DNA of 64,000 nt, from positions 62,001 through 126,000 of IMG/VR virus record IMGVR_UViG_3300048924_000100. One strand, written 5' to 3'. The notes beneath the pieces are model-generated. The model was given only the letters and a program-made list of their open reading frames with translations. It searched no databases and was not told where the DNA came from. Made by a program: the position numbers and the translations under genes. Below, one piece after another: positions 33,240-47,539 of the stretch (position 1 is the first letter of the stretch; every line of letters begins with the position of its first letter).

Positions 33240-33630
33240 AATCTGGTACTCCTGAGAGACGGTGTAAATAAATTGGGTTAAGAGGGGTCATAGCATCCTG
33301 CTTCGACCTTCTGAGTCGAAAGGTACCGACCCTCTAAAAACGTCTCAGAGAAACGGTTCTCCAAAACTAGTACCGTAGGGTACCTGACATACAGAAAACC
33401 GCTAGGATCGTTTCCTAGACAGCTTAGAACGGATCCTGAGAGGGGTGATTGAGGTGAATAGAAACCCTCACTCAGACTCTCATAATTAAATTGCATTCTA
33501 CCTATATATTCTATTTGAGATCTGCCGCCGGGCCGGGAGCGGGGTGTTTAAATTTCTTGTTTTTAAAGTTCCTTCGGAAACTCTGTTAAGTTTTTTGTTT
33601 TTCCAATTGGCTAATTTCAAGAAAAACTAT

Positions 33631-33774
33631 TCCCTTCTGTTTACCTCGCGCACACGCGCTCCGTGCGCTAAAGAACCTAATATATATTTATATATATTTA
33701 TTCTTTATTGCTCTTTTAAAGCTTTTAAAAGCAAAGAAACGCCTGCACGCACACGCACGAGGTATACAGAGGGA
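33631..33774. repeat. Imperfect inverted repeat enclosing an AT-rich core and palindromes
   Basis: TCCCTTCTGTTTACCTCG ... CGAGGTATACAGAGGGA enclosing CGCACACGC x2, (TATATATTTA)x2 and GCTTTTAAAAGC. Confidence 0.7.
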
Positions 33775-33780
33775 TGGAGT

Positions 33781-33801
33781 ATTTCAAACCTAAATTATTA
33801 C
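33781..33801 (+). promoter_or_regulatory. Early promoter variant
   Basis: ATTTCAAACCTAAATTATTAC resembles the other six copies. Confidence 0.6.
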
Positions 33802-33865
33802 TTTGTCACCTAGGAAACCATATTCTAGAAAAACGAATTGCGAAACACATGAGGAGTTAAGATCC

Positions 33866-34429
33866 ATGACGACTGTAGCCTGGAACGGCAAGAAACTGGT
33901 AACGGATTCGCAAGTGTCGCTGGGGACGACGGCGAACCCTGGACCGGTCAAAAAGATTTTCGAACCTGAGGAAGGTGAGTATTGGGAGTGCTACGGCACC
34001 AAGGTCGTGGCATTCGGCATCTCGGGGGATGGCAAAGCAATTGGCTTCATGCGCGATCGACTGCGGGAAGGGATTAGCCACCGTACGCGTTTCGATGACA
34101 TCGAGGAAGTATCGTTCGGCGCGCTGGTGATTACCGAGGACGGCAACTGCTACCGCTGGCAGACCAACAAACGGAATGGCCGGCCACAGCACCAAGACCT
34201 GTTGCAACTCATGCCACCTTGCACCGTCGGTTCTGGTCACGCCTATGCCTTGGGGGTCATGTGGATTGGCAAGGACATCGAGACTGCTGTGAAGGCTGCG
34301 ATCAAACTGGACAAGTGGTCAGGTGGAGACTTACAAATCTGGGAACTTCCACCTAAGCCGGACGTCAAGTCTGTTCGTCCCGTCGCACCAACCGCACAAA
34401 CACAAGTGGCCGAAACACCAGCCGCCTAA
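33866..34429 (+). CDS. HslV/proteasome-beta-like Ntn hydrolase, copy 1
   Basis: GAGGAG RBS puts the start at M-TTVAWNG (N-terminal Thr). Also has TDSQ, KKIF, GISG, GSG and D..SGG. Confidence 0.8.
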   Translation: MTTVAWNGKKLVTDSQVSLGTTANPGPVKKIFEPEEGEYWECYGTKVVAFGISGDGKAIGFMRDRLREGISHRTRFDDIEEVSFGALVITEDGNCYRWQTNKRNGRPQHQDLLQLMPPCTVGSGHAYALGVMWIGKDIETAVKAAIKLDKWSGGDLQIWELPPKPDVKSVRPVAPTAQTQVAETPAA

Positions 34430-34443
34430 CCTGGAATAAATCT

Positions 34444-35040
34444 ATGAGCACCATAGCGTTCGACGGAAAACAACTGGTCACGGACTCGTCGGTTTCGATT
34501 GACGAGACGATCAGCCAAACCCAGTTCCGCAAGATCTTTACACCGATTGACGATAACGAGTACTGGGAGATCAACGGTGTACGGGCGTTGGCGTTCGCAG
34601 CTTTCTCGCTACCGATCATCAACCTGGAACTTCGCAAAGCTTTGCAGAAGGGATTGAACGAAGGGGACGACTCAAGCTGCTTCAGCGAAAACTTTGACGC
34701 GATCGTTATCGACGAGACAGGTCTGGCTTACCAGATTGTGGCGGTTTGGGTGGCGTATGGGGACGATCGAAAGCTTCGCATCAGCTTCATCCCGACTACT
34801 GGCATCGTCGCAATTGGGACGGGTGATCAATACGCACTGGCAGTGATGGCTGTGGGTAAATCTGCTCGGTCGGCGATCAAGGCAGCAATTGCCCTGAACG
34901 TTGATTCGGCCGGTAACCTGCAAAGCTTCGAAGTTCCACCGAAACCTGAAACACCATCGAAGCGCCCTCCGGCGGACACCACTACTGAAGCTGGCAAGTG
35001 GATCGACGTCGGTCAGCTGGATCCGGTTGTCAAGTTGTAA
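34444..35040 (+). CDS. HslV/proteasome-beta-like paralog, copy 2 (degenerate)
   Basis: M-STIAFDG, TDSS, RKIF, GTG and N..SAG; clearly homologous to copy 1. Confidence 0.75.
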   Translation: MSTIAFDGKQLVTDSSVSIDETISQTQFRKIFTPIDDNEYWEINGVRALAFAAFSLPIINLELRKALQKGLNEGDDSSCFSENFDAIVIDETGLAYQIVAVWVAYGDDRKLRISFIPTTGIVAIGTGDQYALAVMAVGKSARSAIKAAIALNVDSAGNLQSFEVPPKPETPSKRPPADTTTEAGKWIDVGQLDPVVKL

Positions 35041-35054
35041 ATCTCCTATGCTAT

Positions 35055-35280
35055 GTGAACTCGTGAGTTTGCTCCTGCTTGAAGATAGTTAGCCCTGGCG
35101 TCCCCGTGGGAATAGTTTGGAGTCCCTACCCACATCAGTCAGTCGTCCCCCATTAACGATTGGCTGTCCCGGCAAAGCATCGCTGGGAAAAGCTCCACCT
35201 GCCAACTTAGTCTCATCGTGTCCGGACATCCCACTGTGGTGTCCGGATGCGGTGGGATTATTTCGCATTTTGTTTTTTGT
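35055..35280 (+). ncRNA. Candidate structured non-coding RNA
   Basis: No credible ORF. It starts at a TATG late-promoter-like motif and ends in a ~23-bp G-U-rich hairpin plus T tract. Confidence 0.4.
35208..35280 (+). terminator. Long-stem terminator
   Basis: 35208-35230 pairs with 35238-35260 using several G-U pairs, followed by T tracts. Confidence 0.7.
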
Positions 35281-35424
35281 TACCGGATGGATATATTTTA
35301 TACTTGCACACGTCTTTCGGTTTTTCTCATAGCTGGGTTTTCCGATGATGTGGATTGGAGGTGGGTCCTACTGTCCTTCGGTTAGCAGGTGCTTCTCTCA
35401 CAGGTGCAGCCTTTCTGAGGACAT

Positions 35425-35484
35425 CCCCTGTTGCGGAGTTTCTTGGGCATGCCAAGCACTCTACTTGCGACAGGGGTTATTTTT
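35425..35484 (+). terminator. Intrinsic terminator
   Basis: CCCCTGTTGC ... GCGACAGGGG plus TTATTTTT. Confidence 0.65.
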
Positions 35485-35540
35485 CATCTGTGGATAGATT
35501 CTTGGGCGATGTAGGCAATGGGTTGAAGTCATGTAAAAAG

Positions 35541-35558
35541 ATTTCAAGCCTACATTAC
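35541..35558 (+). promoter_or_regulatory. Early promoter of phuZ
   Basis: ATTTCAAGCCTACATTAC. Confidence 0.7.
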
Positions 35559-35622
35559 TAACACGTTGACCCAATTGGTCTAACGAATTCTTTCAACTGG
35601 TAACTCAAAGAGAACATTTCAC

Positions 35623-36621
35623 ATGAATGCAAATACTTCGGATCTGGCATACTTCCTCTGCGGTGGTACCGGTATTAACATCGGCGTGGCTCTGAAAAAG
35701 GGTACTCACACCGACAACAACAAAAACGCTTTCTTCGTCGGTCTGGATTCCTCGGATCGTAACAGCTCCGGCGACTTGTTCGAAGTTGTGCAGATGGCCG
35801 TTGCCAACGACCCTGACCAGAAGGCCAAGGGTTCGGGTAAAGTCAAAGCAACCAACTACCCACAAGCTGAACAGTTCATCAACCAGTTCCTGACCAAGCA
35901 CAAGCCACGTGATTACAACATCATCGTCTGCTCCACCGGCGGTGGTACTGGTTCGATGCTGGCTTTCGTTCTGGCGCGCATGCTGTTCGAACGCGATCAA
36001 CTGGTCGTGCTGTGCTTCATCAACGACAAGACCTCGCAGGTTGAAGAGATCAACGTCGTGAACAGCTACCGTTCGTACGCGTCGCTGACCACTCCTGGTT
36101 CGCTGAACCGCGTGGTTCCGTACATGGAGTTCGACAACACCCTGACCAACACTCGTGGTGAAGTCAACCAAATGGTCATCGACAAGCTCGATGTGGCCAG
36201 CCTGTTCCTGAGCAACGTCAACAAGGAACAAGACCACACTGACATGAAGAACCTGCTGAACTTCAGCAAGCACTACGGCGTTCCACCGTCCATGTCGCGT
36301 ATTCGCTTCTACGACGAGAAAGGTGTTGCAGACTTCAAGGGCAAGGTGCCGGTTGCAGTCTCTTCCCTGTTCGAAAGCAGCGATGCAGTCATCCCACGTT
36401 TCAACGGCACCGTGATCCGTTCCACCGGCGTGTTCGCTGACGGCGTTAAGCGTCCAAGCAACGCCCAGGAACTGCACATGGTCCTGGACCACGGCGAAGC
36501 TCTGAAAGAGCTGGAGAAACACATCGAAGCAATGGAAACCCGCAAGGTTGAAACTTCGTCGACCTTCACCCAGCAGAAAGATCTCTCTGCCGGTGCGGAT
36601 GACAAAGGCTTCTTCATGTAA
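35623..36621 (+). CDS. phuZ: Phage tubulin PhuZ
   Basis: CGGTGINIG and the GGGTGS tubulin signature; D..D..N T7 loop; acidic C-terminal tail (ADDKGFFM). Confidence 0.95.
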   Translation: MNANTSDLAYFLCGGTGINIGVALKKGTHTDNNKNAFFVGLDSSDRNSSGDLFEVVQMAVANDPDQKAKGSGKVKATNYPQAEQFINQFLTKHKPRDYNIIVCSTGGGTGSMLAFVLARMLFERDQLVVLCFINDKTSQVEEINVVNSYRSYASLTTPGSLNRVVPYMEFDNTLTNTRGEVNQMVIDKLDVASLFLSNVNKEQDHTDMKNLLNFSKHYGVPPSMSRIRFYDEKGVADFKGKVPVAVSSLFESSDAVIPRFNGTVIRSTGVFADGVKRPSNAQELHMVLDHGEALKELEKHIEAMETRKVETSSTFTQQKDLSAGADDKGFFM

Positions 36622-36629
36622 GTCCGCTT

Positions 36630-36689
36630 AGCTAGTGTAGGGTACCGGGGAGTGATCCTCGGTACCTTATAGCTGCTATATTGTTTTTT
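36630..36689 (+). terminator. Intrinsic terminator
   Basis: AGGGTACCGGGG / CCTCGGTACCTT plus T tract. Confidence 0.7.
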
Positions 36690-36753
36690 GATATCTTTTT
36701 CTACCGGCATCCTCATTACTATGAGGCATGGTTTTTATAAAGGGGTCAAGAAG

Positions 36754-37050
36754 GTGTCTAGAAGCTTCTCTCTGGATTTAAAATCCTATACCCTGGACGT
36801 ACCATTGGGTGCAGAACCAACGGTCTTAAATCGGACCGTAACCACGCTTGATCTGCATGCAATGCTCGTTGATGAAGGGTTTAATTCATTCGAGGTCCCC
36901 AGAGGGTATCACCGTCTTTGGGGAAATGACATTAACGCGTTAAGGGATCAGGTAGCTAGTAAGCTGTTGGGGGTACCTAGAGACGCTGTAGTCTGCATAA
37001 AGACTTTTGGGAAACTTCGGCAGCAAGTACTGGTTACACTGAAATACTAA
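36754..37050 (+). CDS. Hypothetical protein
   Basis: ORF in the conserved post-phuZ cluster; the start codon is uncertain. Confidence 0.5.
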   Translation: MSRSFSLDLKSYTLDVPLGAEPTVLNRTVTTLDLHAMLVDEGFNSFEVPRGYHRLWGNDINALRDQVASKLLGVPRDAVVCIKTFGKLRQQVLVTLKY

Positions 37051-37063
37051 GAAGGGGCGAGCA

Positions 37064-37615
37064 GTGATCAGATATGACGTCATGAACTTGGCTAATAGCT
37101 TTGTCATGGAAGTGGAAGACATTCCAGCAGTCAGGGAGTCAATCGCTGTACGGATGCTCGAAGCTGCCGTGGAGATTATTAATTATCCATCGCGTGAAGA
37201 CAGCATCCTTGATCAATTGGGGAGAGTGTACGAAGATCATTACGAGATGCTGACACCGGATCTTGTAATCATCAAGGTTAAAGAAGCACTGCAAAAGGAA
37301 ATGAAGCGGCGGTCGTGGGATAAGCGACTCCATGTTCAGATCCGTTTTAACAAGGTCTCCCACGCGTTTCATCAGGCCCTTATTGACATGGACCTGGATG
37401 CTACGTTGAGAGCTGCAGCTAAGCCTAAGCCAGTTCAGCGCATTACACGGGCTAAGGTAACAGGCGACACTATCAACGACAATCCAAGTCAGGAGGCCCT
37501 CAATGAATTCCTTGAAACTGTTGAGCGTCGGAGTCTTCGGCGAACTCCGCAGCTTTCAGATCGACAACCGACAGTTGTTAGAGAACCTTTTGAGCGAGAT
37601 CTCAGAAATTACTAA
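37064..37615 (+). CDS. Hypothetical protein
   Basis: GTG start after AAGGGG; 183 aa. Confidence 0.6.
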   Translation: MIRYDVMNLANSFVMEVEDIPAVRESIAVRMLEAAVEIINYPSREDSILDQLGRVYEDHYEMLTPDLVIIKVKEALQKEMKRRSWDKRLHVQIRFNKVSHAFHQALIDMDLDATLRAAAKPKPVQRITRAKVTGDTINDNPSQEALNEFLETVERRSLRRTPQLSDRQPTVVREPFERDLRNY

Positions 37616-38000
37616 CGATTACGTTCCCCATCTACATCGGGAAATGGCCTGGGGTTTGCTTGAGATGGGTGTTGAACAGCTCACGTATTCCAAAGGTGTT
37701 AATCGTAACGACTGTCATTACAATCAGAAAGCCGCTCGTTGCTACACGTACAAAGATGAGAGAGACGATATCCTTGCCACCATTATCTCTCACCTATCGA
37801 CACAGATAGGCAACGCGACCAATAGAACGTCACTGGATCATCCTTTTTTATACCAGATCCTTGCAAACGGGGACGTAATGGTTAGTGTGGATGTCCGGGA
37901 CCTAGAGCCCCTGGCAGACGATTTCATCAGTCAGGAGGAAAGCGGTTATGAGCAAGATTCTTGGCATACCACTGGGGTGCATACCGATAGCCTTTGGTGA
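37503..38000 (+). CDS. Hypothetical protein
   Basis: GGAGG RBS before ATG 37503; overlaps both neighbours. Confidence 0.55.
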   Translation: MNSLKLLSVGVFGELRSFQIDNRQLLENLLSEISEITNDYVPHLHREMAWGLLEMGVEQLTYSKGVNRNDCHYNQKAARCYTYKDERDDILATIISHLSTQIGNATNRTSLDHPFLYQILANGDVMVSVDVRDLEPLADDFISQEESGYEQDSWHTTGVHTDSLW

Positions 38001-38310
38001 ACGCGGTTTCCACCCAGCAGAAATAACAAACCTGATCACATTGTTAATGGGAGTGTGCAGGTATAATGAGGTGGAGTACATCCCCTCGGTGATTGCGGAG
38101 TATATCCGTACGGAGATGGATCTGGATCCACTGCATGCCCAGATCCTGATCCTGGATGCTTTGCCCATGTTACTCGACGTGGGTACACAGTTTAGAAGGA
38201 TGGCCGCTACAGGCTGTCTGCAACGTTATGTTGTGCATAGCCACATCATTTTACTGGAAGTAGACGATGACTACCAAGACCATTACGCATACAGTGATGC
38301 TGCCCCCTAA
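37948..38310 (+). CDS. Hypothetical protein
   Basis: GGAGG RBS; 120 aa. Confidence 0.6.
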   Translation: MSKILGIPLGCIPIAFGERGFHPAEITNLITLLMGVCRYNEVEYIPSVIAEYIRTEMDLDPLHAQILILDALPMLLDVGTQFRRMAATGCLQRYVVHSHIILLEVDDDYQDHYAYSDAAP

Positions 38311-38578
38311 CACTGACGTAACACAATTCATCGGGGTTCACCGCAACCTTATGGAGTCAATGCAAATCCCGCACACGCTGGATTTCTTTGAGAATGTGGA
38401 TGGATTTACTCATCCTATTCCAGAATGTCAGGAGCAGCTAAAGGTGGGTTTCTTCGAATTCTTCCGCCAGCTGCAAGACCTCAAAATGATGTACGGTTCG
38501 GTACAGTGCATTAACGCCACAGTGGGTAACAGCACCGTGACGTTTGTCTTTACCTATCAAGATTTGTCCTCTGCATAA
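38267..38578 (+). CDS. Hypothetical protein
   Basis: 103 aa; GGAAG RBS. Confidence 0.55.
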   Translation: MTTKTITHTVMLPPNTDVTQFIGVHRNLMESMQIPHTLDFFENVDGFTHPIPECQEQLKVGFFEFFRQLQDLKMMYGSVQCINATVGNSTVTFVFTYQDLSSA

Positions 38579-38588
38579 AGAGACCATC

Positions 38589-38948
38589 ATGTGGAAACGC
38601 ATCCTACCAATTGACTACGAAGAGCTGGCCGACCACTTGTTGGCGGTGTATGCAATGGATTGCAGCGACATGCCAGCCGAGCCATTTGATTTTCAGATGG
38701 CGAAGAATGTTTTGATCGATCAAGTGGAAGCCATCATGGAAGACGGCGAGTGCTGCGAAGACACCCACCTGACGGACCTGTTGTTTAAGCATCACATTTA
38801 TGGGTCGGTTAAATCCATGCACGTAACGAGTCTTCCAGGTACGGTCGTGTTTCGAGACGGACATCCTTTGAAGCTTCCGTTGGTTATTATCGAACTCGAT
38901 TCGCAAGGAGAACTCCCGTATGGCAACCCTGAATCCTTCACGTGGTGA
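38589..38948 (+). CDS. Hypothetical protein
   Basis: Probable start is ATG 38589 (MWKRILP), after AAGAGA. Confidence 0.55.
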   Translation: MWKRILPIDYEELADHLLAVYAMDCSDMPAEPFDFQMAKNVLIDQVEAIMEDGECCEDTHLTDLLFKHHIYGSVKSMHVTSLPGTVVFRDGHPLKLPLVIIELDSQGELPYGNPESFTW

Positions 38949-39333
38949 CATCGTTTCATTTCAGCTGGTGAAGAACGGCATCAACGGTGGAGACCGTATT
39001 GACGTAAAAGTCGACGGTATCCTCCAGTATGCAACGGCTCGAATGATTGACCCACAGTTGGCCATCAAGCACAAAAACCTTTTCCCGTACTTCCAGGATA
39101 AGGTAGGCAACGTCGACGATCCAAACACCTACGGGTATTTGGCGTTGCTGGGTCGTAATGACAAACTGGAGATCATCGGGATTCCATGGATCAATGATTC
39201 GACCTTCCAGCTTATCGATGGGCGTAACGCCAACCTCGTGGTTACGAACTGGCGTGAAGATTTCCGTTCCCCGCTGGCTACATTCATGCAGAGCATCGGG
39301 GCGTCTTACACCCTCACGGTTTTTGACAAGTAA
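38920..39333 (+). CDS. Conserved hypothetical protein (gp49-like)
   Basis: AAGGAG RBS; immediately upstream of the DNA polymerase gene as in phiKZ. Confidence 0.65.
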   Translation: MATLNPSRGDIVSFQLVKNGINGGDRIDVKVDGILQYATARMIDPQLAIKHKNLFPYFQDKVGNVDDPNTYGYLALLGRNDKLEIIGIPWINDSTFQLIDGRNANLVVTNWREDFRSPLATFMQSIGASYTLTVFDK

Positions 39334-39342
39334 GGGTAAACT

Positions 39343-39392
39343 GTCACTACATTCCTCATTCATAGGGGAGTGTAGTGACTATTTTCTTTTTT
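39343..39392 (+). terminator. Intrinsic terminator
   Basis: GTCACTACATTCC / GGAGTGTAGTGAC plus T tract. Confidence 0.75.
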
Positions 39393-39446
39393 GCAATCTG
39401 ATTTTTATTTCTTAATTAATTTGCTTATTCTGAGAGTGTTAACCTG

Positions 39447-41531
39447 ATGACTGCCGCAGCTAAACACACATCTCCTTTCCTAGCAGAGGAGTATATACCC
39501 AATCGTAACTTGCTCCAGAACTACCACTACATGGCCGCCGCTTATTTGACGGCTCTTTACAAGTGGGACTACAACACAGTACTGGAGTTGGTAGAGAAAG
39601 TATTTGTACCCAACCAGAACGGCTTTAAGGAAGCCAAGTTCAGAGTCTTTAAGAAGAACAAGTACGGCGACCGTGTTCCTGACATCATGCCGGCTCGTGA
39701 GTTCTTCCAGACAGTTCAGGATAATAACTGGCACCTGTCTCCGTCGTTTGTGGCTTACACGCACACCAACCAAGAACAGTCGATCAACTCGATTGGTACT
39801 GAAACCTTTATCGAATTCCGTCGCCTTTATAAAGGCAAGATGAAAGAAGCTATTTCGTCTGGCGATAAAGAAGCTGCACAAGCGTTTGATGAAATCCAGA
39901 AGGCCCTGAAGATCTTTAACAACGCCCAGTCTGGTGCGATGTCGTCTTCCGGTACTCCGCTGATGAACAAGTCGGGTCACACTACTCTGACCTCTATCTG
40001 CCGTTCCCTGACCTCCGTCGCCAACCTGATGAACGAGCGACTGATTACGGGTAACCGGTTGCTACTCAGTTACAACAAGTCCATGGAACTGTTTATCAGT
40101 ACCCTGGCGTTTGCTAAGCGGGACAAGATCCAGGCGGTAATCGACAAGTACGAAATGAGTTACGCCACCGTAGACCAGGTCATGGACATGGTGAAACGTT
40201 GCGCGTCGTACTACTGGAGCAACCCGACCCAGATCGCAGCTATCCGTACCTTTATGGAAATGCTGTCACCTCTGGAGCTGACAATCATCCTCTGCACCAT
40301 GGACCTCCGTGGGCTGTACACCACCAACCAAGCACTGATCAAACGGTTCTTCGATGAATGGTGCAAAGTTCCTGAGATGCCAACGTCGTTTGAAAACGTT
40401 ACTACCATCAAGGCAGCTAACGACGACTACAAGACACTCTGCACTACCAAGCTGGGCAAAGGGGCGACGGCAGATCAGACCGCGTATCTCAACGCTTACC
40501 ACGTCAGCCTGGAAGTTAAATGGCGAGACTTCATTGAAGCTTTCTTGAAAGCCGATATCCCGCCGTCTGGTGTATTCAGCGTTAAGGAGTTGGTACGTGA
40601 GAACGTTGTAACCTCCGACACTGACTCGATGATCTATTCGGTAGACGCCATCATTGATGACTACATTACCGATAAGAAAGACGAGCTGGCATTTAACGGG
40701 GTACTGACGTACTTCATTCGTTGCATTGCCGTAGACCAGCATGCGCGTCTTAGCACCAACATGAACGTGGCTAAGAAGTTCCGTTATCGTCTGAACATGA
40801 AGAACGAATACCTCTTCAGTTCGTACGTGACTACTTCGATGTCCAAGCACTACTATGCGTTGCAGTTGATGCTGGAGGGTATTCTCTACGATAACCCTAA
40901 ACTGGAACTCAAGGGCGTGCACCTCAGGGGGATCAAGATCGCACTCAAGGTCCGGGAGTTCACGAACAAGCTGATGCGCGATGTGTTGAATGCCATTTAC
41001 ACCAACCAGCAACTGGATGCTCCAGAGTTGTTAAAAGGTGTGGGTGATTTGGAACGCGCTCTGTTTGAAGAACTGGAGAAGGGTGGTTGGAGCTGGTTGA
41101 CCAAGAACGGAATCAAAGAAGAGACGGCCTACAGCAACGCTGATTCGTCGATCTACTTCTACCACGAGATGTGGAAGCAGGTGTTCGCCGATACCTATGG
41201 CGACGCACCAGAGCTGCCGTACCGTGCGTATAAGGTCAACGTTACACTGGACAACAAGACCAAGGTCAAGAAGTTTACTGAGACCTACGGGGAAAGCGAT
41301 GTGGTCAAGAAGATGATGGCTTACATTGAGGCGCGTGGATCGCTAACCTCCGTGTATGTTCCGATTGACATGATCGAATCGATTGGTGGTATCCCGAAAG
41401 AGATCCTACCGATTGTGGATACACGCTTGCTTATTGCACAGAACTTCAAGTCCATCTACGCCATTCTGGAATCCTTGGGCTTGTACATCATGAACAGCAA
41501 GGTAACTCGTCTGGTATCTGACGAGCATTAA
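39447..41531 (+). CDS. Family B DNA polymerase, polymerase subunit (phiKZ gp50-like)
   Basis: Motif B QKALKIFNNAQSG, motif C SDTDSMIY, plus KHYY and ELKGV. Confidence 0.85.
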   Translation: MTAAAKHTSPFLAEEYIPNRNLLQNYHYMAAAYLTALYKWDYNTVLELVEKVFVPNQNGFKEAKFRVFKKNKYGDRVPDIMPAREFFQTVQDNNWHLSPSFVAYTHTNQEQSINSIGTETFIEFRRLYKGKMKEAISSGDKEAAQAFDEIQKALKIFNNAQSGAMSSSGTPLMNKSGHTTLTSICRSLTSVANLMNERLITGNRLLLSYNKSMELFISTLAFAKRDKIQAVIDKYEMSYATVDQVMDMVKRCASYYWSNPTQIAAIRTFMEMLSPLELTIILCTMDLRGLYTTNQALIKRFFDEWCKVPEMPTSFENVTTIKAANDDYKTLCTTKLGKGATADQTAYLNAYHVSLEVKWRDFIEAFLKADIPPSGVFSVKELVRENVVTSDTDSMIYSVDAIIDDYITDKKDELAFNGVLTYFIRCIAVDQHARLSTNMNVAKKFRYRLNMKNEYLFSSYVTTSMSKHYYALQLMLEGILYDNPKLELKGVHLRGIKIALKVREFTNKLMRDVLNAIYTNQQLDAPELLKGVGDLERALFEELEKGGWSWLTKNGIKEETAYSNADSSIYFYHEMWKQVFADTYGDAPELPYRAYKVNVTLDNKTKVKKFTETYGESDVVKKMMAYIEARGSLTSVYVPIDMIESIGGIPKEILPIVDTRLLIAQNFKSIYAILESLGLYIMNSKVTRLVSDEH

Positions 41532-41541
41532 GGAGCACGTA

Positions 41542-41913
41542 ATGACTAAATTGACCAAGGCTGATAACTTCATGTTTTTCAAGGATAGTGCCACTGGTTT
41601 GGTATTTGCAGGGGAGGGGGCTTTCCTGTATCCGGAAAATATGAAGATCATGGTTCAGCCAACGGTGACTGTCGCCATGACCGACGAGATGCATGTCGAA
41701 AAGGGCGTGTACGTTACCTTCAACTATTGTGACCACGATCACGCCTTCTACGTGGGTAAACCAGAAGAAGTCCCTAAGCTGTTGAAAGCACTGTGGGAAG
41801 GTCGTGAATCCAAGATCGTGGTAGAACCTGACTACTACAGCTACCTGATGGATGTCAAGCATCAGGCGCATCTGGATTCCTGGTCGCGTTCTCCTGATCG
41901 GATGGGGAGTTAA
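41542..41913 (+). CDS. Hypothetical protein
   Basis: AAGGAG RBS; 123 aa. Confidence 0.65.
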   Translation: MTKLTKADNFMFFKDSATGLVFAGEGAFLYPENMKIMVQPTVTVAMTDEMHVEKGVYVTFNYCDHDHAFYVGKPEEVPKLLKALWEGRESKIVVEPDYYSYLMDVKHQAHLDSWSRSPDRMGS

Positions 41914-41918
41914 TCATC

Positions 41919-42236
41919 GTGGGTACAGTACATTACTTACCCACTTCCCGGAACAAGGAACACCTTGAACAAGTACTCAGTGAACGTCAGTTCCGAACGG
42001 TAGTACTGGGTAGCCGTCTGGGTAGTTACACTGACGCTACAGCCAGCATGATAAAAGCTCGGGATGAGTTGGACAAGTGGTATGGGTTCTTTGGGCCTGT
42101 CCTGCGTTTCTTAAATCCGATGCAGCACATGTTGGCGGTAGAAACGTTTGCCAGGGCCGAACACAAACAACGGGAAGCTTACAGGGAGTTCATGAGGGCT
42201 AAGAACAAGCTACAAGAGCAGTGGCACCTGAAGTAA
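41919..42236 (+). CDS. Hypothetical protein
   Basis: GGGGAG RBS, GTG start. Confidence 0.55.
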   Translation: MGTVHYLPTSRNKEHLEQVLSERQFRTVVLGSRLGSYTDATASMIKARDELDKWYGFFGPVLRFLNPMQHMLAVETFARAEHKQREAYREFMRAKNKLQEQWHLK

Positions 42237-42250
42237 CAACCAGCCATAAA

Positions 42251-42294
42251 CCTATAACTCCTACTACTCCTTGCGGAGTAGTAGGAGTATAAGG
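42251..42294. terminator. Bidirectional terminator
   Basis: ACTCCTACTACTCC-TTGC-GGAGTAGTAGGAGT between convergent genes. Confidence 0.8.
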
Positions 42295-42351
42295 AAATCA
42301 ATCTTTTTAAATTTTTATATTAAATATGGGATCACTTCGTCGGATTAACCG

Positions 42352-43485
42352 TTAAGTCTGTTCCCGTATAATGAAAACACCCTTCGAATTGAGATCATTC
42401 AACACTTTTACTTCTTCGAGCAGATTACCCAGATGTTCTCTGAAGTACGCTTCAGGGATATTCTTTTGACGATTGGCAATCTGACGATACAGACGGTCGA
42501 ACTCAACGTTGATGTCCGGGCACTTGTACTTCATGCGGTTAGCAATCGACAAGTAGATGGCACAGACCTTCAGCATACCAGGCTCAAAAGCCCAACCGGT
42601 CTGAGCAAACAACGCCTGGTCATGCGGATCGATGTAGTTGGTATAAGGATAACCCCGATACAAACTGTCGATCTGTTTCAGCATCATCGACACATCCTGC
42701 AGACGACGCCCCGTCAGCACATCTATAAGGAAGAACATGTACTGCTTAAAAAGCTTCTCCTCATTCAACGTGGTGAAGGTAACCGACTCAGTAATGATCA
42801 GGTCGTTGAGGTCTTTCTCCTTAACGAAGAACTCGTAGAGGACGTTGATGACCGACAACTGGTTCTGGTAGAAGGTCGCCTGATAGAGCGGGTACTGACA
42901 GACATACGAGGCAATCCCCGTGCTGACTTCCCGCTTCTCACGCATGAACATCCACCAGCCTACCGCCAAGGCTACCAGGTCCAAACCAATGATGGCCACG
43001 TCTGTGATCACATTGTTAGCACCCGGTTTCTTCTCAACAGTATGTTTGTACCCACGATCCAATACTGTTGAATAGAGGGGGATGACCGAACGCAAATCTT
43101 CCAGTTTCAGCTTATCCACATCAAACGTCTGGAAAGAATCGAGGAGTACCCAGTGCTCTCTGACGTTACGGCGGTAGAAGCCATCCGGCTCTGCATTGCC
43201 AATCCGGTTGATAGATGTGATGTGATAAATCGTGCACAGTGAATTAGCACGGAAGCGAGTATTATCTACAACCTCCTGCAAGCTCCACTCAGGGTCGATC
43301 GCCAGATGGCGAAGAATCCCTACCAGCTTGTGTTGGTCTTCGAGGTGGAAAGGCGTACGGTCTACGTAGGCCCGATAGTCTCGGCGGTTGAACTCTGTTA
43401 CACGGAGTAGGTTCCCCAAGTCACCGAAGTTGCTGCGGGGATACTTCCGGCTGATATCCTCAGCGGGATAGGTAAAGATGGGCAT
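42352..43485 (-). CDS. Conserved virion protein (gp52-like)
   Basis: Probable start MPIFTYP at 43485; on the opposite strand just upstream of chmA, as in phiKZ. Confidence 0.6.
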   Translation of the reverse strand: MPIFTYPAEDISRKYPRSNFGDLGNLLRVTEFNRRDYRAYVDRTPFHLEDQHKLVGILRHLAIDPEWSLQEVVDNTRFRANSLCTIYHITSINRIGNAEPDGFYRRNVREHWVLLDSFQTFDVDKLKLEDLRSVIPLYSTVLDRGYKHTVEKKPGANNVITDVAIIGLDLVALAVGWWMFMREKREVSTGIASYVCQYPLYQATFYQNQLSVINVLYEFFVKEKDLNDLIITESVTFTTLNEEKLFKQYMFFLIDVLTGRRLQDVSMMLKQIDSLYRGYPYTNYIDPHDQALFAQTGWAFEPGMLKVCAIYLSIANRMKYKCPDINVEFDRLYRQIANRQKNIPEAYFREHLGNLLEEVKVLNDLNSKGVFIIREQT

Positions 43486-43685
43486 AGTAGTTATCCGAAA
43501 CAAATGATGGGGATGTAAGAATAAAGTATTACTGCAATCTCCTATCTTATGTGAACAAGTCACATCAGAGGAAGTGTCCTCTACTGGGGACCATTGCGCA
43601 ATTCGAGAATTAGTGATATGATTAGAAGTTGATTACTCTATATCATCCCTGCTGAAAAGTAGGGTGATTTCAGTGGGGTAAGAAA

Positions 43686-43703
43686 ATTTCAAACCCATAT
43701 TAC
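43686..43703 (+). promoter_or_regulatory. Early promoter of chmA
   Basis: ATTTCAAACCCATATTAC. Confidence 0.7.
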
Positions 43704-43789
43704 CAATGTGATTAGTAATACAGATGTTCCACATCGGTAAAGATAATCACGCTATAGCAAACTATCTTCGTACACAAGGAAAACAACTC

Positions 43790-45808
43790 ATGAGTCTGAA
43801 TAACGGTTCCGAAAGCACCTCCTGGAACGAAAACAACGAAAAGCCGAACTCCAATCAGGCTCCAGGCGCCTCGGGCACCATGGCTCCTCTGGACGGTCTG
43901 GCTGGTCTGCTGCGTCTGCCGTCGATGACGAGCGATAACCGCAACCTGAAAGAGGTTAGCGAAACCATCGAGAAACTCGAGGCGATCTACGAGAACGCCA
44001 AGAAATCCACCACCAACGAACTCCAGCGCAAAATCGTTCCGACGGTTGAAATGCTGACTCCGTCCATCTCGGCTCAACTGCCAGGTGTCGGCCTGTACGT
44101 CGTCTTCGACGGCACCATGTACGTGATGGCTGCTCTGTTCTACAACCGCACGCTGAGCATCGGCGTAGAGCGCATCACCGTCAACACCAACAACATCGTC
44201 CAGCAGATGTCCGCGCCACTGACTCCAGCTCAGTACCCGAACAGCCTGTTCCTGGAAAAGCTGACCTCGCACTACACCAAGGTTGCCGAAGCCCTGGGCG
44301 TGAAGAACGTCAGCGTGATCAACATGATCGTTTGCGATCTGGAAATGCTGCACCACGCAGAAGCCGGCGATCCGAAAGACTACGCCCACCGTCAGGCGAA
44401 CTACATCGCCTCCGAGTGGGAAGAAGCGATCATGGTCAAGACCGTGCGCGAAATCGTGGGCAAGGGCTACCAAGTTCCGGTTCCGTTCGCTACTCCTGAT
44501 CAGCCGTACGGCAAAGATGGCTGCGCCGAAGCTCGCGTTAACGCAATCGCTTTCCGCACCAGCAAGGCCGGCACTCTGACTCCGGACAACATGGAAGTTA
44601 TTGTTAGCACCATCAACAATAACAACCAGAACACCGGCAACTTCCAGGCCAACTCGAAAGAGCTGATCCGGGTTACTGGTGCGGTCAGCCTGAACGGCGT
44701 GTCGTGGGAAGATCACCAGCGTTTCATGATGTCGCACCGCTCGCAAGAGCAAATGAACTCGCTGCAACAGTTCCTCGGCAACAGCATGGGCATGGGCGCA
44801 TACCCACAAGGCTTCAAGCCACTGCGTCCAGTTATCACCATCGGCACCGTGCAAGCTGGTGAGCAACTGTGCAACAACGGCGGCCTGTTCCCGTTCTTCA
44901 GCGGCCTGTACGCGCTGATGGCGACGAACAACCAGTACGTCTGGTCTGAAGCTCTGCGTCGTCACTCGGTAGGTGCTCGTGGTAACCTGGCCGACCTGGA
45001 AACTCGTGTTGATCAAATGGTCAGCCAGATCCCAGGCGGTTTCCAGAACCCACAACGCATCCGCCTCGACGAGAAGAAGATGTCGGACACCGAGCTGGTT
45101 AACAACTGGATTCGCCAGAACGTTAGCCCGCACGCAACCTTCCAGATCAACCTGATCCCGGCAGGTCCGAACGCGTCCATCAACAACTTCTTCTTCCAGC
45201 TGGCCAAGGTCGGTCAGAACGCCGCTGAAATCAAGGTAGTCATCGCTCTGATCGACTCCATGACCAAAGGCGCGTTCTCGGAAGTGATCCGCGGCAACGT
45301 TACCTCGCAACAAGGTTGGGTGCCTTCCAAGCCAGTGCTGATCCCGACTGGCATGATCGCAGTCAACGGCATGGCTGAATACGCCGGCAAGAAGTTCAAC
45401 ACCCAGGAACTGGACGAGATGATGATCTCGCACATCAAGGGCCCGAAAGGTCAGCTCGCAGCCGAAAGCCTGCTGTCGACCATGTACGGCACCATCCCGG
45501 GTGAGGAATTTAAACAGCGGGCACAAAAGCTGCGCGTGGAAACCTCGTCGTCGCTGTTCGACGGTCAGGTTCACATCAACGGCTGGGCTCAGCCTCACAT
45601 CTGGGCGCCTGACTTCATGGCCGCCATGTCGAAAGCCATGGACACCATCGGTCAGCTGAACGTTGCCAACAACCTGGGCAGCTGGCGCAACACCAGCCTG
45701 GCTTCGACGCCTGGCATCGGTCTGGCTACCCTCGTGGGCGCTGGTTCGAACAACGCGACCGGCAACGGTCTCGGTGTTGCATACAACATGAACATGCCAT
45801 TCATGTAA
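43790..45808 (+). CDS. chmA: Chimallin, major phage nuclear shell protein
   Basis: 672 aa with extreme codon bias, its own early promoter and terminator, and flexible termini. It lies directly upstream of nvRNAP beta'N, the phiKZ gp54 position. Confidence 0.85.
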   Translation: MSLNNGSESTSWNENNEKPNSNQAPGASGTMAPLDGLAGLLRLPSMTSDNRNLKEVSETIEKLEAIYENAKKSTTNELQRKIVPTVEMLTPSISAQLPGVGLYVVFDGTMYVMAALFYNRTLSIGVERITVNTNNIVQQMSAPLTPAQYPNSLFLEKLTSHYTKVAEALGVKNVSVINMIVCDLEMLHHAEAGDPKDYAHRQANYIASEWEEAIMVKTVREIVGKGYQVPVPFATPDQPYGKDGCAEARVNAIAFRTSKAGTLTPDNMEVIVSTINNNNQNTGNFQANSKELIRVTGAVSLNGVSWEDHQRFMMSHRSQEQMNSLQQFLGNSMGMGAYPQGFKPLRPVITIGTVQAGEQLCNNGGLFPFFSGLYALMATNNQYVWSEALRRHSVGARGNLADLETRVDQMVSQIPGGFQNPQRIRLDEKKMSDTELVNNWIRQNVSPHATFQINLIPAGPNASINNFFFQLAKVGQNAAEIKVVIALIDSMTKGAFSEVIRGNVTSQQGWVPSKPVLIPTGMIAVNGMAEYAGKKFNTQELDEMMISHIKGPKGQLAAESLLSTMYGTIPGEEFKQRAQKLRVETSSSLFDGQVHINGWAQPHIWAPDFMAAMSKAMDTIGQLNVANNLGSWRNTSLASTPGIGLATLVGAGSNNATGNGLGVAYNMNMPFM

Positions 45809-45827
45809 TTGTTGTAGCCTGCAATGG

Positions 45828-45875
45828 ATTGGTGGGCGAGGGGGTTAACACCCTCTCGCTCGCTGGTTCTTTTTT
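45828..45875 (+). terminator. Intrinsic terminator after chmA
   Basis: GGCGAGGGGG / CCCTCTCGCT plus T tract. Confidence 0.8.
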
Positions 45876-45901
45876 CTGTTTTCTCTTTTTTGGAGCCGGC
45901 T

Positions 45902-47539
45902 ATGGGCAATATGTATCTACCGGAACTCACTCCGTCAAATGAGCTAGCTATTAAGAAGCTCACGCAGTACAGCGAAGCAAACCTGGATCCAATGCCGTTC
46001 TTTAATCGCTATGCGGCAGCCTTTGGCAAATCGTTGGAAGATGATCCTCGTTATTCGGAACCGCTGTACTGGGACTTCGAAGATTACGACTACCTGCACG
46101 ACACCAGTCGATTCAAGCCAATCTACCTGAACGAGTTCGACTTCAACATTCAGGAAGACCGTGAGGCTATCGAGCGCTTAACGCGTATGGAGTTCGTCGG
46201 TAACTCATTCGACACGGTGGCAAGCTGTAACCCAGCGTGTGGCTACTATCGTGGTAACTACCGCCTGAAGCAGGGTAAAGCCTGTCCTAAGTGCGGTGAA
46301 GTGCCAGAGCTGTTTCTCGATCGGGGTGAAGACACCCGGTTGTGGCTGAAGCTACCGGAAGGGGTAAAGGGTTTTGTTAACTTGGGTTTCTTTTCGACCT
46401 TCTTTAACAAGATCGGTATCGGTAGTCCAAAGGTCTGTGTACCTCGATACTTTATCGACCCGATCTATCGGGCGCAGATCAACAAGCAGAAGAACACAAC
46501 GGTTAACCTGATCCGCAACATGTTGGAAGAGCTTCAGATTACTGAAGTCAACATGAACGGCTTCCAGGATCGTTGTGACGACATCATGCACTGGATGCTG
46601 GTAGGTAATGGCAAACGTCATTGCACCACCTCGCACGAAGGTGTGGTGTTGATGGAAGTGTACCAGAAGAACAAGCACATCGCGTTCTCCAAGTACATGA
46701 AGGTACCGAATCGCTATGCAACCATTCTGGAGAAGTCGGGCAAAGATACATACGCCTATCCTCACCAGCCAGTGACTGCACAGCTGTACACCGCGATTGC
46801 TGATACCAAACGCTCCAACCCTGTGGTTAAGCTTAACGCTGCTGACAAGCGCCGTAACGTGGACATCGTGGGCAAGAACCTGGTTAAGCTGGCCGACCAA
46901 TACCGTAAGGTGAACAACCCGAAAGCGTTGTTTGGTAAACCGGCGATCAACCGTAAACACGTGGCCTCTGGTGCAGTTCCGTTTACCGGTCGTTCCGTAG
47001 TGACGTCGGTAACAGGTATCCTGAACCCGGACGAGTGGATGGTTCCGTGGAAGATGTGTCTGGCTATTCTGGACTACCACATCACGGGCTTCCTGTATCG
47101 TCGTGGGCATACACCGTATCAGGCCATTCAGCGTATCAGTCGAGCTGCTTATTGGATCGACCCGCTGATTGATGAATTCTTCCGCGACATGGAAGACAAC
47201 AACAAGGCCATCATCCAGAGTGGGCGTAACCCGTCGATTGAGTTCCTCAGTCTGCGTAGTGCGTTCCTGCGGGTTAACCGCGATCTCCGCGATGAAAGTA
47301 TCCGGGTACCGATTCTGGCTGTTAGTGAATCGAACACCGACTTTGACGGCGACAACCATTATATCGTCCTTATGGCTGATAACGAGTCGAAAGCAAAAGC
47401 TTACGGCGCATGGGGTCACCACCAGACGTTGGACCGCAACATTCCGTTTACAGTGGGCGACTACGCCGGTCAGGCGGCTACTAACCTCATGAACCTTAAC
47501 ACGCTCATGGCGCAGACCGTCATCATCGACGCAGCCTAA
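45902..47539 (+). CDS. Non-virion RNAP beta' N-terminal subunit (gp55/56.1-like)
   Basis: Zn-finger Cys (CNPAC..CPKC), GRSVV, GRNPS and the catalytic NTDFDGD. Confidence 0.9.
   Translation: MGNMYLPELTPSNELAIKKLTQYSEANLDPMPFFNRYAAAFGKSLEDDPRYSEPLYWDFEDYDYLHDTSRFKPIYLNEFDFNIQEDREAIERLTRMEFVGNSFDTVASCNPACGYYRGNYRLKQGKACPKCGEVPELFLDRGEDTRLWLKLPEGVKGFVNLGFFSTFFNKIGIGSPKVCVPRYFIDPIYRAQINKQKNTTVNLIRNMLEELQITEVNMNGFQDRCDDIMHWMLVGNGKRHCTTSHEGVVLMEVYQKNKHIAFSKYMKVPNRYATILEKSGKDTYAYPHQPVTAQLYTAIADTKRSNPVVKLNAADKRRNVDIVGKNLVKLADQYRKVNNPKALFGKPAINRKHVASGAVPFTGRSVVTSVTGILNPDEWMVPWKMCLAILDYHITGFLYRRGHTPYQAIQRISRAAYWIDPLIDEFFRDMEDNNKAIIQSGRNPSIEFLSLRSAFLRVNRDLRDESIRVPILAVSESNTDFDGDNHYIVLMADNESKAKAYGAWGHHQTLDRNIPFTVGDYAGQAATNLMNLNTLMAQTVIIDAA

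What the first reader, a model, noticed from the sequence alone, without database searches (positions are those of the whole stretch)
43536..43685. Second copy of the motif heads a hairpin-rich non-coding stretch upstream of chimallin
Seen: the motif is followed by consecutive short hairpins (TGTGA/TCACA; AGAGG/CCTCT; TGATAT/ATATCA; CCCTGCT/AGTAGGG) before the early promoter of chmA. CACATCAG also occurs in the phuZ-upstream region. Inference: either a paralogous small RNA, or a second (late) promoter and structured leader that co-regulates the two structural genes of the phage nucleus (shell and spindle).
Basis: partly seen in the sequence, partly recalled or inferred. Interest (0 to 1): 0.6.

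Follow-up and report, generated by a model that had tools for sequence, protein, structure and literature searches.

The report
Second promoter and structured leader of chmA
Upstream of the early promoter of the phage-nucleus shell gene, this uncultured jumbo phage has a second, phiKZ-style "TATG" promoter followed by a conserved folded RNA leader, which is the dual early-plus-middle control already mapped for the same gene in phage phiKZ, so it is real but mostly ordinary.

Summary
The 21-mer AATCTCCTAT-NN-TATGTGAAC occurs exactly twice in the 214-kb genome, at window 35040 and 43536.

The motif is not a generic late-gene signal. Other intergenic TATG sites share only TATG(TG) with it, and in five related genomes the extended motif again sits only upstream of phuZ and of chmA.

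The chmA copy has the architecture of a phiKZ middle/late promoter for the non-virion RNA polymerase (nvRNAP):
- an A-rich stretch plus TACT at -21..-18;
- TATG with its G (43551) as the predicted start.

phiKZ chmA itself is published as having an early primary and a middle-type secondary start site.

The hairpin region is a plus-strand RNA structure: 95% of cells pair, five pairs show compensatory changes, and there are 36 G-U against 6 A-C cells. No real terminator follows it, so it is most likely a roughly 240-nt structured leader reading into chmA.

It is not a paralogue of the phuZ-upstream RNA, because a covariance model finds no second copy. That other copy drives a terminated non-coding RNA, so co-regulation of phuZ is unsupported. 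The shared CACATCAG is chance. No transcript data exist, so the start site and polymerase are inferred.

The parts
43520..43533 (+). A-rich stretch plus TACT box (TACT 43530-43533, i.e. -21..-18 from G43551); resembles the upstream element of phiKZ middle promoters
   Evidence: Sequence. AATAAAGTnTnACTGnAAT is nearly invariant in 6 close relatives. RisingSun has TTACC with TTAC at -22..-19, and phiKZ chmA has TACT at -20..-17. The phiKZ middle motif is TACT about 22 nt upstream of the start, preceded by an A-rich repeat (PMC8244752).
43536..43556 (+). Second copy of the 21-mer AATCTCCTATCTTATGTGAAC; core CTAT-NN-TATG, with TATG at 43548-43551 and predicted start G43551
   Evidence: Only two copies in the genome. 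In relatives, CTATNNTATGTGAAC occurs only at the phuZ and chmA sites. CTAT-NN-TAT is conserved upstream of chmA in the 66% and 58% clades, EL and RisingSun; phiKp_32 has TAATTATATG at the same place. In phiKZ, TATG with G as +1 is the nvRNAP late promoter (PMC4666361).
43550..43564 (+). Hairpin H1 (TGTGA/TCACA), at the very 5' end of the predicted RNA
   Evidence: Two pairs show compensatory changes in the 66% clade and in L011.
43567..43582 (+). Hairpin H2 (AGAGG/CCTCT); its 3' arm can alternatively pair with GGGGA at 43586-43590
   Evidence: Three of 4 pairs show compensatory changes (AGAGG/CCTCT, GGGAG/CTCCC, AGGAG/CTCCT; G-U in L007). The alternative hairpin appears in the full-leader fold. 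EL, RisingSun, phiKp_32 and phiKZ each have an unrelated stable hairpin at the same place.
43586..43602 (+). Conserved unpaired box GGGGACCATTGCGCAAT (contains the palindrome ATTGCGCAAT); function unknown
   Evidence: Invariant in close relatives. The GGGACCA / GAGACCA core is kept in L008, L011, RisingSun and phiKp_32. It is unique in the genome.
43613..43646 (+).
   Evidence: 96-97% of cells pair, but only through G-U/A-U changes. GUGAUR can instead pair with the early-promoter core YAUUAC, with 100% paired and A-U to G-C at one pair.
43638..43648 (+). Invariant box CTATATCATCC, similar to the early-promoter core
   Evidence: Identical in all 10 aligned relatives out to the 58% clade. It is unique in the genome.
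43647..43664 (+). Hairpin H5 (CCCTGCT-GAAA-AGTAGGG) followed by a weak tail TGATTTCAG; not a convincing terminator
   Evidence: G-U to G-C and U-A to U-G changes occur. No terminator-like site is called in 43300-44000. The T-tract is absent in L008 and L011.
43679..43715 (+). Early (vRNAP-type) promoter of chmA: TAAGAAAATTTCAAACC-CATATTAC-caat-GTGATTAG
   Evidence: It matches this genome's early class. TATATTAC occurs 9 times, all upstream of genes. The class has a T-rich/aaacc element before the core, and 9 of 16 members have GTGA 4 nt after it.
43790..45808 (+). chmA (chimallin, nuclear shell protein), 672 aa
   Evidence: phrog_4795 'nuclear shell protein', E 2.3e-115. The order virion protein(-) | chmA | RNAP beta is the same in EL, RisingSun and phiKZ, and the same gene order is seen in phiKp_32, whose record annotates these genes only as hypothetical proteins.
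35040..35060 (+). First copy of the 21-mer (AATCTCCTATGCTATGTGAAC), heading the phuZ-upstream non-coding RNA
   Evidence: In relatives, conservation begins at CTATGTGAAC.

Best explanation
The 21-mer is a promoter for the phage's non-virion RNA polymerase, of the phiKZ middle/late kind. It has TATG with its G (43551) as the start, and in the chmA copy an A-rich/TACT element about 20 nt upstream.

Transcripts from it run on the plus strand through about 125 nt of conserved stem-loops. They then pass over the early promoter and its 5' UTR and continue into chmA. This gives a second chmA mRNA with a roughly 240-nt structured leader.

The early promoter serves the injected virion polymerase at the start of infection. 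The upstream promoter would keep shell protein coming once transcription has moved into the phage nucleus. The first stem starts at the 5' end and probably protects the RNA from 5'-end-dependent decay.

Shown: the motif's uniqueness and conservation, the promoter-like architecture, the plus-strand RNA structure, and the lack of a terminator.

Inferred: the start site, the polymerase, the timing and the role of the leader.
For: 1. Uniqueness. There are two copies only in 214 kb. In five related complete genomes the extended motif occurs only at the same two loci, or only the phuZ one in the 58% relative.

2. Promoter architecture.
- phiKZ late promoters are TATG with G as +1 (PMC4666361).
- phiKZ middle promoters have TACT about 22 nt upstream, preceded by A-rich sequence. 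phiKZ chmA (PHIKZ054) has an early-motif primary start and a middle-motif secondary start (PMC8244752).
- The window has AATAAAGTATTACT, then N14, then TATG.
- phiKZ chmA upstream reads AAATAATACT, then N13, then TATG-TA-GTGAAC, about 80 nt before its early core.

3. TATG as a signal in this genome.
- TATG is twice as frequent as expected in upstream intergenic DNA (58 against 29).
- The major head protein and terminase genes are preceded by T-rich sequence plus TATGTGTA.
- So TATGTG is used before bona fide late genes.

4. Start site proxy. At the phuZ copy there is no minus-strand gene to serve, and conservation starts at CTATGTGAAC and runs to a terminator.

5. RNA structure on the plus strand.
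- 20 consensus pairs in 4 helices; 95% of cells pair, against 36-59% when partners are slid.
- 5 pairs have compensatory changes (2 of 500 shuffles reach this).
- 0 of 500 shuffles reach the covariation score.
- There are 36 G-U cells against 6 A-C cells, so 95% pair on the plus strand and 80% on the minus strand.
- All 10 sequences fold better on the plus strand (mean -35.2 against -27.4 kcal/mol).

6. No terminator-like site lies between the motif and chmA.

7. It is not an early promoter. The early class keeps 4 nt between its core and GTGA and has a TTTCAAACC-type upstream element. The motif has neither.
Against: - No transcript data exist. No RNA run holds this phage, so the start site, the polymerase and read-through are inferred.
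- The G of TATG is not conserved at the chmA site in more distant relatives: TATA in EL and L011, TATTG in L008. In phiKZ every position of TATG matters.
- The TACT box is absent in L008, L009 and EL, displaced in L011 (about 10 nt closer to the TAT box), and absent from the phuZ copy.
- The box CTAT-NN-TAT also resembles the early core CTATATTAC. Two further similar boxes follow in tandem, so a different reading of these boxes is possible.
- H5 with its UGAUUUC tail could still terminate part of the transcripts.
- Ten related sequences from about four lineages give limited independent covariation.
Confidence: 0.58

Rival explanations
1. The motif is a promoter, but its product is a separate small RNA of about 115-125 nt (G43551 to about 43672) that ends at hairpin H5. 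This would be a 5'UTR-derived small RNA like those reported in phiKZ and 201phi2-1, with little read-through into chmA.
For: - phiKZ and 201phi2-1 have many short, abundant RNAs made by premature termination in 5' UTRs (PMC10914365; PMC11512511).
- H5 is a 7-bp GAAA-loop hairpin followed by UGAUUUC(A/U), and it is conserved in close relatives.
- The other copy of the motif does drive a terminated RNA.
Against: - The tail has only 3-4 U. The scan calls no terminator there, whereas it calls the phuZ-upstream one.
- The U-tract is missing in L008, L009 and L011, although the upstream structure is kept.
- This phage's clear terminators carry TTAT plus long T runs.
Confidence: 0.17
2. The CTAT-NN-TAT box is a variant of the early (virion polymerase) promoter core. 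The intergenic region then carries tandem early-type promoters (43542, 43638, 43695), and the upstream transcripts are also early.
For: - CTATCTTAT, CTATATCAT and CCATATTAC are alike.
- CTAT..TA[TC] occurs 17 times in the genome, 13 of them in intergenic DNA oriented toward a gene.
- In L011 the presumed early core is CTATATCAC.
- The motif's GTGAAC resembles the GTGATTAAG that follows early cores.
Against: - Early promoters keep a fixed 4-nt spacer to GTGA and a T-rich/aaacc upstream element. The motif has a 0-nt spacer and AATCTCC instead.
- The phuZ copy in L016 and L017 loses the CTAT box but keeps TATGTGAAC.
- phiKZ chmA's upstream start carries the middle motif, not the early one.
Confidence: 0.1
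3. The conserved boxes act at the DNA level. They could be binding sites for a regulator of the divergent gene pair, or the promoter of the minus-strand virion structural gene 42352-43485, which needs a promoter in this intergenic region. On this view the hairpins are a by-product.
For: - The motif lies 21-57 bp from the start codon of the divergent virion gene in all relatives.
- No other minus-strand promoter is recognisable.
- CTATTATATAG in EL is nearly palindromic, and ATTGCGCAAT is a perfect palindrome.
Against: - The same motif at the phuZ site has no minus-strand gene to serve.
- Compensatory and G-U changes keep the helices only on the plus strand.
- The palindrome is not kept in L008.
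Confidence: 0.1
4. The second copy and the hairpins are coincidence in AT-richer intergenic DNA.
For: The single-sequence folding z-score of the 130-nt stretch is only -2.0.
Against: - The expected number of motif hits is 0.02.
- The motif is conserved at both loci in relatives.
- There is covariation.
Confidence: 0.02

Closest known systems
Dual promoters of phiKZ chmA (PHIKZ054): early-motif primary start plus middle-motif secondary start (Wicke et al. 2021, PMC8244752)
   Same: - Same gene and same synteny.
- An early core (TATATTAC-type) lies next to the gene, and a second upstream site has A-rich sequence plus TACT about 20 nt before TATG.
- The phiKZ sequence even reads TATG-TA-GTGAAC.
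   Different: - Here the start site is only predicted.
- The upstream site lies about 150 nt from the early core, against about 80 nt in phiKZ.
- It is followed by a longer structured region conserved across relatives.
- phiKZ has an extra gene (gp53) between the divergent virion gene and chmA.
- I could not see the published phiKZ coordinate, so the match to TATG at 45490 is my inference.
phiKZ late promoter of the non-virion RNA polymerase (TATG, G = +1; P119L; Yakunina et al. 2015, PMC4666361)
   Same: - TATG core, and T-rich or CTAT sequence just upstream.
- The P119L non-template strand GCTATATTGCTATGTAGAC (from the oligos in PMC7618050) resembles CCTATGCTATGTGAAC.
- Flanks are needed for strength in phiKZ too.
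   Different: - A 21-nt conserved context is much longer than anything described for phiKZ late promoters.
- The gene downstream is an early/continuous gene, not a virion gene.
- The polymerase's specificity in this clade is untested.
5'UTR-derived small RNAs of jumbo phages (phiKZ, 201phi2-1; Putzeys et al. 2024, PMC10914365; PMC11512511)
   Same: A promoter is followed at once by a conserved structured RNA upstream of a gene. One such RNA is conserved across genera, upstream of the tail gene gp182.
   Different: Those are defined by a mapped premature terminator. No convincing terminator is present here. The phuZ-upstream copy fits that class better.

Membership tests
phiKZ-type late promoter (nvRNAP) | [quoted passage not shown] | tested here: met
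   TATG lies at 43548-43551 (+), 239 nt before chmA. TATG is kept in the window clade, L009, RisingSun, phiKp_32 and phiKZ, but is TATA or TATTG in EL, L011 and L008.
phiKZ-type late promoter (nvRNAP) | Transcription starts at the G of TATG and depends on nvRNAP | not testable with these tools
   No RNA run holds this phage. Testing needs 5' end mapping or in vitro transcription.
phiKZ-type middle promoter | TACT (AAanTTACc) about 22-24 nt upstream of the start, preceded by A-rich sequence | tested here: met
   For the chmA copy, AATAAAGTATTACT has TACT at -21..-18, conserved in 6 of 7 close relatives. RisingSun has TTACC at the same spacing and phiKZ has TACT at -20..-17; phiKp_32 has only TTACA, 3 nt closer to the TATG. 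The phuZ copy has GTTG there, so the feature is not met for that copy.
Early (vRNAP) promoter class of this genome | Core C(C/T)TA(T/C)ATTA(C/T) with a T-rich/aaacc element just upstream and GTGA 4 nt downstream | tested here: not met
   The motif has CTATCTTAT with AATCTCC upstream and GTGA directly abutting it. The true early promoter of chmA is at 43696.
5'UTR-derived small RNA with premature terminator | Intrinsic terminator between the start site and the gene | tested here: not met
   No terminator-like site is called in 43300-44000. The H5 tail is weak and is lost in L008 and L011.
Paralogue of the phuZ-upstream non-coding RNA | Shared sequence and structure beyond the promoter head | tested here: not met
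   Covariance model R1 of the chmA leader matches only 43548-43675 in the whole genome at E<=10. The pairwise alignment shows nothing beyond the 21-mer.
Any Rfam family | Match to a curated covariance model | tested here: not met
   There are no matches at E<=1 in window 33000-46000, on either strand.
Conserved structured RNA (generic) | Base pairs kept through compensatory and G-U changes on one strand | tested here: met
   H1 and H2 have compensatory changes. H4 and H5 have only one-sided (G-U) changes.

The most novel reading that the evidence does not exclude
The chmA leader is a conserved cis-regulatory RNA of nucleus-forming phages that tunes shell-protein synthesis. Possible mechanisms are a protein bound at the invariant GGGACCA box, or the two sets of mutually exclusive pairings: AGAGG|CCUCU|GGGGA and GUGAUR|UAUCAU|YAUUAC.

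The extended 21-nt motif it shares with the phuZ-upstream non-coding RNA would be the recognition site of the still-unknown factor that directs nvRNAP to middle promoters. That would define a small regulon tied to the nucleus and the spindle.
Probability: 0.12. Interest if true: 0.65.

Novelty: new member of a known kind. Interest (0 to 1): 0.33.

Why it matters
Shell protein is needed from the first minutes of infection, when only the injected polymerase works. It is still needed later while the nucleus grows and transcription happens inside it. A gene with one promoter for each polymerase is the simple solution, and phiKZ data already show it for chmA.

What this locus adds:
- The arrangement and a folded leader are conserved across several genera.
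- The promoter carries an unusually long conserved context, found at only one other place in the genome.

How nvRNAP finds middle promoters is an open question: purified enzyme does not use them (PMC4666361, PMC10612078). A two-member, 21-nt motif gives a concrete sequence to test for a specificity factor.

The value is that of a lead for experiments in cultured relatives, not of a new kind of element.

Tried and rejected
- Rfam scan of 33000-46000: nothing.
- Near-identity search of phage GenBank records: no match. The distant search gave only the chmA coding region of EL-like and RisingSun-like phages at 66-72% identity.
- Sequencing runs: 11 DNA metagenomes (root, soil, sediment) and no RNA run. 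Read laying was therefore not used and no start site could be read.
- The metagenome scan for more relatives returned almost only the contigs already held; L037 (a near-identical relative) and L039 (identical upstream region to L008) added no new lineage. The pattern scan of viral contigs added none.
- Paralogous small RNA: rejected by the covariance model search.
- CACATCAG as a shared element: rejected.
- A conserved small ORF in the intergenic region: rejected.
  - The 15-codon GTG frame in the window is broken by indels in relatives.
  - The 54-aa ORF annotated in EL-like HHBS8_1 has no counterpart here.
  - The in-frame GTG extension of the minus-strand gene to 43563 is broken by non-triplet indels.
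- TACTGCAA as a shared middle-promoter word: it is common in coding DNA, so rejected.
- A guessed PHROG accession for the capsid protein was a wasted call. The gene was then identified properly.
- Ceyssens 2014 and the supplementary start-site tables of the phiKZ and 201phi2-1 papers are not held. The published phiKZ secondary start coordinate could therefore not be compared.
- The large protein searches, structure prediction and complex prediction were not needed and were not run.

Full report
**Where we are.** The window is bases 62001-126000 of a 214,198-bp IMG/VR viral contig. It is a nucleus-forming jumbo phage only distantly related at the DNA level to Pseudomonas phage EL and Erwinia phage RisingSun (no near match; 66-72% identity within chmA). 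DNA of this phage turns up in root, soil and sediment metagenomes, and no RNA run holds it.

My ORF map and PHROG scans give this order:
- two HslV-like peptidase genes, 33866-35040 (+);
- PhuZ, 35623-36621 (+);
- DNA polymerase, 39510-41531 (+);
- a virion structural protein, 42352-43485 (-);
- ChmA, 43790-45808 (+);
- an RNA polymerase beta-like subunit, 45902-47539 (+).

The finding lies in the 304-bp divergent intergenic region 43486-43789. The same arrangement (virion protein on the minus strand, then chmA, then RNAP beta) is found in EL, RisingSun and phiKZ, and the same gene order in phiKp_32, whose record annotates these genes only as hypothetical proteins. phiKZ has one extra gene, gp53.

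**The observation.**
- the 21-mer at 43536-43556;
- the four inverted repeats at 43550-64, 43567-82, 43614-45 and 43647-64;
- an early-type promoter core, CATATTAC, at 43696.

The pattern AATCTCCTATNNTATGTGAAC, with up to three mismatches, matches only 35040 and 43536 in the window. The expectation is 0.02. It also matches only those two places in the whole genome.

The 8-mer CACATCAG is indeed shared with the phuZ-upstream region. But it occurs nine times in the genome and is not kept at the phuZ site in relatives. I treat it as chance.

**Promoter classes of this phage.** Words enriched in upstream intergenic DNA define an early class. TATATTAC occurs nine times in the genome, always upstream of a gene. 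TACATTAT is a common variant. The class has a T-rich/aaacc element just before the core, and 9 of 16 members have GTGA exactly four bases after it.

TATG, the phiKZ late promoter with its G as the start (PMC4666361), is twice as common as expected in upstream intergenic DNA (58 against 29). The major head protein and terminase genes are preceded by T-rich sequence plus TATGTGTA. Intergenic TATG sites otherwise share only weak context, with T at -4 and -6.

The 21-mer therefore contains the late core TATGTG, but its remaining bases are not a general feature of late genes.

**What the chmA copy looks like.** Upstream of TATG (43548-43551) lies AATAAAGTATTACT, with TACT at -21..-18 from G43551. 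Wicke et al. describe the phiKZ middle promoter as TACT centred about 22 nt upstream of the start and preceded by an A-rich repeat. They report that phiKZ chmA (PHIKZ054) has an early-motif primary start and a middle-motif secondary start (PMC8244752).

The phiKZ sequence upstream of chmA reads AAATAATACT, then N13, then TATG-TA-GTGAAC, then a hairpin, then the early core about 80 nt further on. RisingSun has TTTTTTACC with TTAC at -22..-19 before CTATTATATG. phiKp_32 has TTAC three bases closer.

The chmA copy thus has the architecture of a phiKZ middle promoter that also carries the late TATG. Such a combination is known in phiKZ for P62M and P78M. In phiKZ, middle transcripts are thought to be made by nvRNAP inside the nucleus with an unknown helper (PMC10612078).

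**Conservation.** Eleven IMG/VR loci encode relatives of ChmA. They include six loci at 92-97% identity over the full protein, three at 66% and one at 58%. A metagenome scan added almost nothing new.

In the close relatives the whole intergenic region is 88% identical. In five related complete genomes, CTATNNTATGTGAAC with at most one mismatch occurs only at the chmA and phuZ sites. One genome has it only at chmA, and the 58% relative only at phuZ.

Within a genome the two copies share 14-19 of 21 bases. The consensus is AATYYYCTAT-NN-TATGTGAAC.

Further out, the box CTAT-NN-TAT is kept upstream of chmA in every lineage examined except phiKp_32, which has TAATTATATG at that place, but the last base varies:
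- TATG in the window clade, L009, RisingSun, phiKp_32 and phiKZ;
- TATA in EL and L011;
- TATTG in L008.

This is the main sequence-level weakness of the TATG reading.

**The hairpins are an RNA structure on the plus strand.**

Counted on that alignment:
- 95% of cells form standard pairs, against 36-59% when partners are slid by 1-3 columns.
- Five pairs have compensatory changes; 2 of 500 shuffles reach this.
- No shuffle reaches the covariation score or the paired percentage.

H1 and H2 carry the compensatory changes. Examples are AGAGG/CCTCT, GGGAG/CTCCC and AGGAG/CTCCT, and GTGA/TCAC against GTAG/CTAC. H4 and H5 vary only through G-U.

There are 36 G-U cells against 6 A-C cells. The same helices would therefore pair in only 80% of cells on the minus strand. 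All ten sequences fold more stably on the plus strand (mean -35.2 against -27.4 kcal/mol), and the consensus energy is -10.6 against -7.0.

In EL, RisingSun, phiKp_32 and phiKZ a stable hairpin of unrelated sequence sits at the place of H2.

The 3' half has competing pairings. It can also pair with the early-promoter core YAUUAC, where one pair switches A-U to G-C in four sequences. The pyrimidine arm of H2 can also pair with the following GGGGA. I cannot decide between these alternatives.

**Leader or small RNA?** The terminator scan finds nothing between the motif and chmA. It does find the strong terminator downstream of the other copy. H5 is followed by UGAUUUC(A/U) only, and that tail is missing in L008, L009 and L011.

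I therefore favour read-through: a roughly 240-nt leader that contains the early promoter and the early 5' UTR. Partial termination at H5 remains possible. It would make a small RNA of about 120 nt, of the kind described in phiKZ and 201phi2-1 5' UTRs.

**Relation to the phuZ copy.** There the motif follows the stop codon of a plus-strand gene. Conservation begins at CTATGTGAAC. A roughly 215-nt RNA with 68 predicted pairs, 12 of them with compensatory changes, runs to an intrinsic terminator at 35211-35257 plus a U tract. A second conserved block and hairpin/T-tract follow before phuZ's own early promoter.

Its 5' GUGAA pairs with UUYGC next to the terminator. In the chmA RNA the same GUGA pairs locally with UCAC. 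Both RNAs would therefore begin inside a helix, which is a known way to slow 5'-end-dependent decay. This is an inference.

A covariance model of the chmA leader matches only itself in the genome at E<=10. It gives only marginal hits at the orthologous sites of phiKp_32 and EL. So the two RNAs are not paralogues; they share a promoter head. Because the phuZ copy's transcript is terminated twice, the motif does not obviously co-regulate phuZ.

**Verdict.** The site is most likely a second, nvRNAP-type (middle/late) promoter with a conserved structured leader for chmA (confidence about 0.58). The rivals are:
- a terminated small RNA (0.17);
- a variant early promoter (0.10);
- a DNA-level element or the promoter of the divergent virion gene (0.10);
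- chance (0.02).

The dual early/middle control of chmA is already published for phiKZ, so this is a new member of a known kind. The modest new points are the leader's conservation across genera and the unusually long motif that occurs at only two places in the genome.

Noticed in passing
window 35055-35270 (and 35285-35485): A non-coding RNA of about 215 nt lies upstream of phuZ. It is better conserved than the neighbouring coding DNA. It has 68 predicted pairs, 12 with compensatory changes, its 5' and 3' ends are paired, and it ends at a strong intrinsic terminator. A second conserved block with its own hairpin and T-tract follows. There is no Rfam match. EL and the 66% clade have a similar long intergenic region with a similar terminator tail (TTTTGTTTT).
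   Followed up: partly
window 42352-43485 (-) and 43486-43789: The divergent virion structural gene has no clear Shine-Dalgarno sequence. No conserved TATG lies on the minus strand of the intergenic region, so its promoter is unidentified. The CTAT-NN-TAT box lies 21-57 bp from its start codon in all relatives and is nearly palindromic in EL.
   Followed up: partly
window 43542, 43638, 43695: Three similar boxes lie in tandem on the plus strand: CTATCTTAT, CTATATCAT (invariant out to the 58% relative) and CCATATTAC (the early core). GUGAUR at 43613-18 can pair with either of the last two. The pairing with the early core shows an A-U to G-C switch.
   Followed up: partly
window 43586-43602: The box GGGGACCATTGCGCAAT is invariant, apparently unpaired and unique in the genome. 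It contains the perfect palindrome ATTGCGCAAT. The GGGACCA / GAGACCA core is kept as far as RisingSun and phiKp_32.
   Followed up: no
whole genome G000 (e.g. 14001, 31149, 76835, 170777, 206979): The early promoter class has the core TATATTAC or TACATTAT. Some members carry an upstream TTTAAGATAC about 17 nt before the core. GTGATTAAG lies 4 nt after the core in 9 of 16 members and is probably the start site.
   Followed up: partly
G000 163044 and window 25897: The major head protein and terminase large subunit genes are each preceded by T-rich sequence plus TATGTGTA. This suggests an extended late-promoter consensus TATGTG in this clade. phiKZ P119L (GCTATATTGCTATGTAGAC) is similar.
   Followed up: partly
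L043 1721-1885 (Pseudomonas phage HHBS8_1): A 54-aa 'hypothetical protein' is annotated across the orthologous chmA-upstream region of an EL-like phage. It has no counterpart in the window clade and is probably a false gene call over the leader.
   Followed up: partly
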